A stretch of 64,000 nucleotides of DNA from Heteronotia binoei (Eukaryota): contig NC_083230.1 in assembly GCF_032191835.1 (NCBI RefSeq), positions 23,498,001 to 23,562,000 of the forward strand. Reading direction: 5' to 3'. The first letter of the stretch is position 1. The number at the start of each line of letters is the position of its first letter. Below the pieces are notes generated by a model that was not told the origin of the DNA, did no database searches, and saw nothing but the letters and a program-made list of their open reading frames with translations. Positions 45,748 through 46,317 of this stretch are shown in pieces. Position numbers and translations under genes: made by a program.

Positions 45748-46317
45748 AGATTTCAGGTTTTCACGGCTGGTAACATCATTAGGGTTTGTAGAATCTTTCG
45801 GGATCAAGTGCCATGTTCTACTGGAGAAAGTTTTCCTTCCAGGGCTGCTGGAGAGCTGCTATTTCTACCAAGATTGGTACCCAGCTCTGCAAAACACCCT
45901 ACAGACTGTAAATTGCAGAAAGTCTCAGAACAACTAGCACATTCCACAGAACAATCAGCACAGTCAACAACCATCTTCCTTATCTTCACATCCCTTCCAA
46001 CCCTCCCAGCAATTAACACAGAACAATGGTCATATTCAACAGCCAGTTTCCTTATCACTATCCTTCCAGGAAGCCCCACCAAACAATGGGCACATCCACA
46101 AACCAATTGCCCTTTCATCACACCCTCTCCAGCCTAGAAATAGCAGCTTTCCAGCAGCCCTGGCCCCACTCAATGCACGGCAGCCAAGAAGGTCTGAGCG
46201 CCTGCTCCGGCTGCAACGCCACTGAGGATGTTCTCCGCAGCTGAGAACGAAACGTCTGGAAGGAAAACTTTCTCCAGTAGAACACGGCACTTGATCCCGA
46301 AAGATTCTACAAACCCT
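45748..46317 (+). mobile_element. 5'-truncated Penelope-like element with inverted pLTR segment
   Basis: 62-nt inverted repeat 45781-45842 / 46256-46317 (1 mismatch); 26-nt inverted repeat 45842-45867 / 46135-46160; ORF-end-like DWYPALQN; hammerhead motif. Confidence 0.85.
46219..46259 (+). ncRNA. Minimal type I hammerhead ribozyme
   Basis: CCA-CUGAGGA-U-GUUCUC(cgcagcu)GAGAAC-GAAA-C-GUC-UGG: intact core, 6-bp stem II, palindromic ACGU stem III, 3-bp stem I; predicted cleavage after C46256. Confidence 0.8.

What the first reader, a model, noticed from the sequence alone, without database searches (positions are those of the whole stretch)
46219..46259. Intact minimal hammerhead ribozyme in a Penelope pLTR
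All catalytic nucleotides (CUGAGGA, GAAA, GUC) are present, with a 6-bp stem II, a 3-bp stem I (CCA/UGG) and a loop-less palindromic ACGU stem III. This is the architecture established for PLE hammerheads that cleave as dimers. It is a candidate functional self-cleaving RNA that could cut any host transcript reading through on the plus strand.
Basis: partly seen in the sequence, partly recalled or inferred. Interest (0 to 1): 0.7.

Follow-up and report, generated by a model that had tools for sequence, protein, structure and literature searches.

The report
Penelope retrotransposon hammerhead ribozyme relic
The 41-base hammerhead ribozyme motif is real and intact, but it is the standard ribozyme of a very abundant lizard Penelope-like jumping gene, sitting in one dead, truncated copy with no sign of cutting RNA here, so it is an ordinary find.

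Summary
Window 46219-46259 (+) is a complete minimal type-I hammerhead and the only hit of a general min-HHR descriptor in the window (0.003 expected per 64 kb).

It is not a chance motif. It has the same geometry as the published Poseidon_Ac (Anolis) ribozyme:
- The core is identical.
- The A9-U-G10.1 triplet is the element's ATG.
- The cut site lies 26 nt after that ATG.
- Stem II is 6 bp with a 7-nt loop.
- Four base pairs differ by compensatory changes.

The ribozyme sits in a 5'-truncated Penelope-like copy (45868-46318). That copy holds an ORF C-terminal remnant, a spacer, the ribozyme and a 30-codon ORF "tail". It is joined head-to-head to a short inverted arm (45744-45867). The whole insertion is flanked by a 10-bp target-site duplication.

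The functional claim is not supported:
- Unique flanks have zero RNA-seq depth.
- Family-wide reads show no pile-up of ends at 46256/46257.
- No partner ribozyme lies within 64 kb.
- Stem I (3 bp) and the ACGU helix III are predicted to be very weak.
- The Anolis homologue cleaves only with its own protein.

The kind is known, and this scan already holds 193 hammerhead notes. Only the inverted arm's break at the scissile bond is mildly interesting, and it is a single case.

The parts
45734..45743 (.). Left copy of the 10-bp target-site duplication TTTCTTAATA
   Evidence: Read. An identical 10-mer abuts the other end of the insertion. It is AT-rich, like the PAc target preference.
45744..45867 (-). 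Inverted, 5'-truncated arm of the same Penelope-like element. It holds a long ORF 'tail' (45842->45744) joined to 29 nt of spacer (45867->45839). It lacks the 96 nt that hold the ribozyme.
   Evidence: 62 nt at 98% and 29 nt at 97% to the + arm. The junction sits in a CTGG microhomology that includes the scissile bond.
45868..45937 (+). 5' truncation point of the + arm and remnant of the PLE ORF C-terminus (QDWYPALQNTLQTVNCRKSQNN, stop at 45935-37)
   Evidence: translation, compared by eye with the Poseidon_Ac C-terminus IWLPVLQNSKIKTVNKKQYSEN. Family reads continue upstream of 45867 with ...TTTAACAGAAAGGAAGAAGG (FNRKEEG), against FNRKEET in PAc (table 7). Family reads have C at 45935, so the stop is private to this copy.
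45938..46218 (+). Spacer/pLTR segment between the ORF end and the ribozyme. It is A/C-rich with imperfect internal repeats.
   Evidence: (45945-84 vs 46017-56, 80%). Family reads cover it.
46219..46259 (+). Minimal type-I hammerhead ribozyme motif. Predicted cleavage is between C46256 and U46257.
46228..46317 (+). First 30 codons of the PLE ORF (MFSAAENETSGRKTFSSRTRHLIPKDSTNP), the 3' 'tail' of the insertion. The ATG is A9-U-G10.1 of the ribozyme.
   Evidence: Same layout as Poseidon_Ac (MPAIDVGETSG..., cut 26 nt after the ATG). Family reads diverge from the window after 46317 (table 7).
46319..46328 (.). Right copy of the target-site duplication TTTCTTAATA
   Evidence: Identical to 45734-45743.

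Best explanation
This is the hammerhead ribozyme that Poseidon/Penelope-type retrotransposons carry at the junction between their pseudo-LTR and the start of their ORF. It is preserved with an intact sequence in one dead, 5'-truncated, two-armed insertion of a very abundant gecko family.

In the parent element's tandem transcripts the motif is thought to cut the RNA 26 nt after the start codon. It would do so by pairing its ACGU with a second copy (dimer), or with help from the element's own protein.

Shown here: the motif, its homology and covariation with the Anolis ribozyme, the element's anatomy, and the single insertion event (target-site duplication).

Inferred: at this locus the motif is inert. 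It is alone, its helices I and III are too weak to form unaided, the locus is not detectably transcribed, and RNA from the family shows no cleavage ends.
For: - Motif and statistics.
- All four published hallmarks of metazoan PLE min-HHRs are present: conserved core, an extra nucleotide between 9 and 10.1, a G10.1-C11.1 pair, and palindromic 15.2-16.2.
- Gap-free 41-nt alignment to the Poseidon_Ac unit junction: 29/41 identical. All 17 core and helix III positions are invariant.
- All 9 proposed pairs are kept in both sequences. 4 have compensatory changes on both sides and 1 a one-sided change. Slid controls give 33-50% paired.
- The peptides encoded over stem II differ (MFSAAEN vs MPAIDVG). 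So the RNA pairing is what is kept, not the protein.
- PLE anatomy: ORF C-terminal remnant, ORF-start tail, adjacent inverted 5'-truncated arm and a 10-bp AT-rich target-site duplication. All are listed as PLE features in PMC8557442 and PMC11167929.
- Inertness: and the literature.
Against: - No Rfam hammerhead model matches, even at E<=10.
- No PLE reverse transcriptase or GIY-YIG ORF lies in the window. PLE identity therefore rests on about 50 codons of ORF ends, the ribozyme and the insertion architecture.
- The covariation test uses only two sequences (33/500 shuffles reach the observed value).
- The RNA-seq is ordinary fragment sequencing with about 6% of each run read. It appears unstranded, and only ends above one fifth of local depth are reported. 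Low-level cleavage cannot be excluded.
Confidence: 0.9

Rival explanations
1. The motif is locally functional. It cleaves any + strand host transcript that reads through this site.
For: The core and helices are intact and identical to the family majority sequence. The only common family variant inside the motif is 46242 U>C in loop II (table 3).
Against: - Zero RNA depth in the unique flanks 45300-45707 and 46320-46676 in two RNA-seq runs.
- No begin or end pile-up at 46256/7 (table 6).
- No partner HHR in 64 kb.
- Stem I pair probability is 0.001, because UGG is taken up by a downstream hairpin. The ACGU duplex is worth -1.7 kcal/mol.
- Single min-HHRs were inactive in vitro. The PAc HHR needs PAc protein, and no cleaved ends were seen in Anolis RNA-seq.
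Confidence: 0.04
2. It is a non-LTR retrozyme: a small non-autonomous tandem repeat with hammerheads that makes circular RNAs.
For: Retrozymes derive from PLE pLTRs and occur in reptiles.
Against: There is only one ribozyme and no tandem array. The unit carries both ends of a PLE ORF. Family reads continue upstream into the endonuclease C-terminus coding sequence.
Confidence: 0.03
3. It is a chance match to a short hammerhead consensus.
For: No Rfam hit. The fold is not unusually stable.
Against: The descriptor expectation is 0.003 per window. There is position-for-position homology with compensatory changes to an experimentally tested PLE ribozyme. The motif sits at the expected place in a PLE insertion.
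Confidence: 0.01

Closest known systems
Poseidon_Ac (PAc) hammerhead of Anolis carolinensis (PMC11167929)
   Same: Core CUGAGGA-U...GAAACGUC is identical. The ATG is formed by A9-U-G10.1, and the cut lies 26 nt after the ATG. Stem I is 3 bp, stem II 6 bp with a 7-nt loop, and helix III a loop-less ACGU. The encoded ETSG motif is shared, as is a tail ending in an A/C-rich stretch (CAAACCCU vs CAACAACCCUG)..
   Different: 12 of 41 bases differ: 9 in stems, all keeping the pairing, and 3 in loop II. The gecko spacer between ORF end and ribozyme is longer (about 285 nt vs about 126 nt). This copy is truncated and dead. No activity data exist for it.
Metazoan PLE min-HHRs (Cervera and De la Pena 2014, PMC4209133)
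   Same: Minimal type-I motif with a long helix II, a short helix I, an extra base before 10.1, a G10.1-C11.1 pair and palindromic 15.2-16.2. Such motifs are mostly found as lone copies in truncated PLEs, sometimes as pairs on opposite strands.
   Different: Helix I here is 3 bp, against 4-5 bp in the Schistosoma families. Geckos are not among the reptiles named in that paper (turtle and snakes).
Animal non-LTR retrozymes (PMC7229834; bioRxiv 10.64898/2026.07.22.740005)
   Same: Type-I hammerheads related to PLE pLTRs.
   Different: Retrozymes are short tandem repeats that yield circRNAs and carry canonical loops. This locus is a single motif inside a PLE fragment with ORF ends.

Membership tests
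Hammerhead ribozyme (type I, minimal PLE form) | Catalytic core C3 U4 G5 A6 N7 G8 A9, then G12 A13 A14, then a non-G residue at 17 | tested here: met
   CUGAGGA at 46222-28, GAA at 46249-51, C17 at 46256.
Hammerhead ribozyme (type I, minimal PLE form) | Helix II closed by a loop, with a G10.1-C11.1 pair | tested here: met
   6 bp (46230-35 with 46243-48). Hairpin -4.8 kcal/mol, pair probability about 0.6 in 190-nt context. Pairing is kept through 3 compensatory changes vs PAc.
Hammerhead ribozyme (type I, minimal PLE form) | Helix III with an A15.1-U16.1 pair (here only possible between two copies, via the ACGU palindrome) | tested here: inconclusive
   The ACGU palindrome is present. It cannot pair within one molecule because there is no loop. 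As a duplex it is worth -1.7 kcal/mol. No second copy lies in the window.
Hammerhead ribozyme (type I, minimal PLE form) | Helix I flanking the core and the cut site | tested here: inconclusive
   CCA/UGG (3 bp) exists and covaries with PAc (A-U vs U-A). Its predicted pair probability in context is 0.001.
Hammerhead ribozyme (type I, minimal PLE form) | Extra nucleotide between A9 and G10.1, and palindromic 15.2-16.2 (PLE min-HHR hallmarks, PMC4209133) | tested here: met
   U46229. C15.2-G16.2 at 46253-54.
Hammerhead ribozyme (type I, minimal PLE form) | Match to a curated covariance model (Rfam Hammerhead families) | tested here: not met
   No hammerhead family at gathering score or at E<=10. 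This is a detection aid rather than a defining property. My inference is that the models miss the motif because it lacks a loop III.
Hammerhead ribozyme (type I, minimal PLE form) | Site-specific self-cleavage after position 17 | tested here: not met
   No excess of RNA-seq read starts or ends at 46256/46257 among family reads, at about 120-190 depth per mate direction (table 6). The library type and the one-fifth-of-depth threshold make this a weak test. Biochemistry cannot be done here.
Penelope-like element (Penelope/Poseidon clade) | Single ORF with reverse transcriptase and C-terminal GIY-YIG endonuclease | tested here: inconclusive
   Only the ORF ends are present in the window: the last 22 codons and the first 30 codons. 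Both resemble Poseidon_Ac by eye. The reads' upstream consensus encodes FNRKEEG, like PAc FNRKEET. No RT or EN domain could be tested.
Penelope-like element (Penelope/Poseidon clade) | pLTR plus 'tail' from partial tandem organisation, a frequent adjacent inverted 5'-truncated copy, and a target-site duplication | tested here: met
   The tail is the ORF start after the spacer. Inverted arm. 10-bp target-site duplication. Definitions are in PMC8557442.
Penelope-like element (Penelope/Poseidon clade) | Hammerhead motif at the pLTR/ORF junction | tested here: met
Non-LTR retrozyme | Head-to-tail tandem repeats of about 170-400 nt, each with a hammerhead | tested here: not met
   One motif only. 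No tandem array.

The most novel reading that the evidence does not exclude
The inverted arm next to the ribozyme is collinear with the + arm from its 3' end up to the scissile bond. It then jumps 96 nt upstream through a CTGG microhomology.

This could be a DNA fossil of in-vivo cleavage. Reverse transcriptase would have run off the 5' end of a hammerhead-cut RNA at U46257 and switched template.

If a genome-wide census showed junctions and 5' truncations enriched at this bond, it would be the first in-vivo evidence that vertebrate PLE hammerheads cut. The Anolis study looked for such evidence in RNA-seq and did not find it.
Probability: 0.2. Interest if true: 0.55.

Novelty: new member of a known kind. 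Interest (0 to 1): 0.15.

Why it matters
It matters little as a single locus. Hammerheads at the pLTR/ORF junction of Penelope-like elements have been published since 2014 and were characterised biochemically in a lizard in 2024. This scan already holds 193 notes that mention hammerheads, and the listed ones in this genome concern the same kind of motif.

Two points have modest value:
- The gecko-Anolis comparison gives clean compensatory evidence that the RNA fold is conserved, not the overlapping peptide.
- The neighbouring inverted arm offers a cheap genomic test of whether these ribozymes cut in vivo, namely junctions at the scissile bond.

Tried and rejected
- Rfam at gathering score and at E<=10 found no hammerhead match.
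- BLAST of 45700-46400 against the window found no further copy of the element. My descriptor found no second hammerhead. Covariation within the window was therefore impossible.
- Pfam scan of the seven longest clean ORFs of the window gave no family. No host gene or PLE RT/EN could be placed in the window.
- Thermodynamic special-ness of the 41-mer (z = -0.44) and of the tail hairpin (z = +0.45) is not significant.
- The open frame from the ORF remnant through the spacer to the UGA inside the core is not over-read. The region is A/C-rich and open in other frames too.
- Retrozyme and chance readings are rejected (see rivals).
- The big protein searches, structure prediction and collection scans were not used. 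There is no protein of useful length here, and the collections on hand are not vertebrate genomes.
- The Poseidon_Ac protein and tail comparisons beyond the 41-nt motif were done by eye, not by a tool, to avoid typing long sequence. The 41-nt PAc junction typed joins the last 11 and first 30 bases of the published tandem unit.
- No reads-tool refusals occurred, and no consensus of the element was built.

Full report
**Observation**

The + strand at 46219-46259 reads CCA CUGAGGA U GUUCUC CGCAGCU GAGAAC GAA ACGU C UGG. This gives:
- stem I CCA/UGG (3 bp);
- the full C3-A9 core;
- one unpaired U;
- a 6-bp stem II with a 7-nt loop;
- G12-A14;
- a loop-less ACGU palindrome for A15.1/C15.2/G16.2/U16.1;
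- C17 at 46256.

Cleavage would fall between 46256 and 46257.

I wrote a general min-HHR descriptor: core, optional bulge, stem II of 4 bp or more, palindromic helix III, stem I of 3 bp or more. It finds this and nothing else on either strand. Random 64-kb sequences of the same dinucleotide make-up gave 0.003 hits on average. The literal pattern had 0 hits in 100 shuffles.

Rfam's hammerhead models do not match, even at E<=10. The isolated 41-mer is not unusually stable.

**What it is**

The supplement of PMC11167929 holds the Poseidon_Ac (PAc) unit of Anolis carolinensis. Its tandem junction reads CCU CUGAGGA U GCCUGC CAUAGAU GUGGGC GAA ACGU C AGG.

The two 41-mers align without gaps and 29/41 bases are identical. 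Every core and helix III position is invariant. All nine proposed base pairs are kept in both sequences. Four have changes on both sides and one a one-sided G-U change. Sliding the partners by 1-3 columns drops pairing to 33-50%.

In both elements A9-U-G10.1 is the ORF's ATG (46228-46230 here), and the cut lies 26 nt after it. The peptides over stem II differ (MFSAAEN vs MPAIDVG), so the RNA pairing is what is conserved. The ETSG that follows is simply the translation of GAAACGUCNGG.

All four hallmarks that Cervera and De la Pena list for metazoan PLE min-HHRs are present:
- conserved core;
- extra base before 10.1;
- G10.1-C11.1 pair;
- palindromic 15.2-16.2.

**Surroundings**

The motif sits in a 5'-truncated + strand copy, 45868-46317/8. 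From 45869 the frame reads QDWYPALQNTLQTVNCRKSQNN*. By eye this is alignable with the PAc C-terminus IWLPVLQNSKIKTVNKKQYSEN.

RNA and DNA reads of the family run on upstream of 45867 with a 98%-agreed sequence. It encodes FNRKEEG, against FNRKEET in PAc (table 7).

An A/C-rich spacer follows, then the ribozyme, then the first 30 ORF codons. These end at CAAACCCU (46317), where family reads diverge from the window. This is the PLE "tail", and it ends in an A/C-rich stretch. In PAc, reverse transcription starts internally in an A/C-rich stem-loop.

Directly upstream lies an inverted arm, 45867->45744. It carries a longer tail and 29 nt of spacer, but it lacks the 96 nt that hold the ribozyme.

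The whole two-armed insert is flanked by an exact 10-bp duplication, TTTCTTAATA (45734-43 and 46319-28). So it is a single insertion into AT-rich DNA. This is the complex tandem/inverted structure described for PLEs, and it fits PAc cutting and extending both target strands.

No RT or GIY-YIG ORF is in the window. Clade membership therefore rests on the ORF ends, the ribozyme and the architecture.

**Is it working here?**

I laid two 2026 RNA-seq runs (raw reads, about 6% of each read), one RNA contig set and one small DNA run on 45300-46800 at 90% likeness or more.

- The unique flanks (45300-45707 and 46320-46676) have zero depth. All signal therefore comes from other family copies. More than half of the laid reads run on into unlike sequence.
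- Depth is continuous across the ribozyme.
- The table of places where molecules begin or end lists only 46117. Nothing is listed at 46256/46257.
- This matches the Anolis report, which saw no reads beginning or ending at the HHR site.
- Among the best-supported rows the tool lists (40 more were not shown), the only variant inside the motif is loop II 46242 U>C. One site in 41 nt is not significantly fewer than in the spacer.
- This copy's motif equals the family majority. Elsewhere the copy has about a dozen private differences, so it is a few percent diverged.
- The two mate directions are about equally covered, so the libraries appear unstranded.

In a 190-nt context the stem II hairpin has pair probability about 0.6, but stem I has 0.001. 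Its UGG is taken up by a stronger hairpin, CUGGA...UCCAG, at 46256-46277. The ACGU/ACGU duplex is worth only -1.7 kcal/mol.

Published assays found single min-HHRs inactive and dimers weak. The PAc ribozyme was inactive unless PAc protein was added. A lone copy with no partner in 64 kb is therefore most likely inert.

**Comparison and novelty**

This is a gecko member of the published Poseidon-type PLE hammerhead. The genome's identity as a gecko comes from earlier notes of this scan and was not tested here.

The scan has met this before on other DNA. 193 notes mention hammerheads, and the ones listed come from other pieces of this genome. The neighbouring inverted arm already has its own follow-up.

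It is not a retrozyme, because there is no tandem array and both ORF ends are present. It is not a chance motif.

**The one loose thread**

The inverted arm's collinearity with the + arm ends within a 4-nt microhomology that includes the scissile bond. The ambiguity covers 5 of roughly 150 possible breakpoints, so chance is about 3%. That estimate is my own.

This would fit RT run-off at a ribozyme-cut 5' end followed by a template jump. But it is one case. The read data show no family-wide junction or start at that bond among the listed rows.

**Verdict**

The identity as a PLE hammerhead is supported with high confidence. The local function is not supported, and the finding is ordinary.

Noticed in passing
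window 45839-45867 with 46135-46163, and 45781-45842 with 46256-46317: The inverted arm lacks exactly the 96 nt between two CTGG tetramers. One junction placement coincides with the hammerhead scissile bond (46256|46257). This may be RT run-off at a cleaved 5' end followed by a template jump, or a chance deletion.
   Followed up: partly
window 45869-46225 (+): The frame of the ORF C-terminal remnant stays open through the whole spacer, apart from a stop at 45935 that family reads replace by C. It ends at the UGA inside the ribozyme core (46223-25), 2 nt before the next ATG. The region is A/C-rich and open in other frames too, so this may mean nothing.
   Followed up: partly
window 46256-46277 (+): The hairpin CUGGA...UCCAG lies directly 3' of the cut site and sequesters the 3' strand of stem I. 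By eye, Poseidon_Ac has a comparable hairpin at the same place (CAGGAG...CUUCUG). It could be a regulatory alternative fold or a protein-binding site.
   Followed up: partly
window 46723-46789: A short stretch with very high read depth in all four runs and heterogeneous loose ends on both sides. It is a fragment of another extremely abundant repeat.
   Followed up: no
window 27852-28047 (+): Rfam 7SK match (43.6 bits against gathering 35) with large internal parts missing. Probably a 7SK-derived pseudogene or retrocopy.
   Followed up: no
window 20682-20753 (+), 57343-57414 (+), 36542-36613 (-): Three near-identical tRNA-like matches with mismatched acceptor stems. They are likely heads of a tRNA-derived SINE family.
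   Followed up: no
window 47464-47549 / 47655-47740, also 54480-54565 / 54666-54751: Two 86-nt inverted-repeat pairs (93% and 79%) with spacers of about 100 nt. Possibly copies of one foldback or MITE-like element.
   Followed up: no
window 3021-3186, 12406-12595, 41635-42166: Runs of N (gaps or masking). Left untouched.
   Followed up: no
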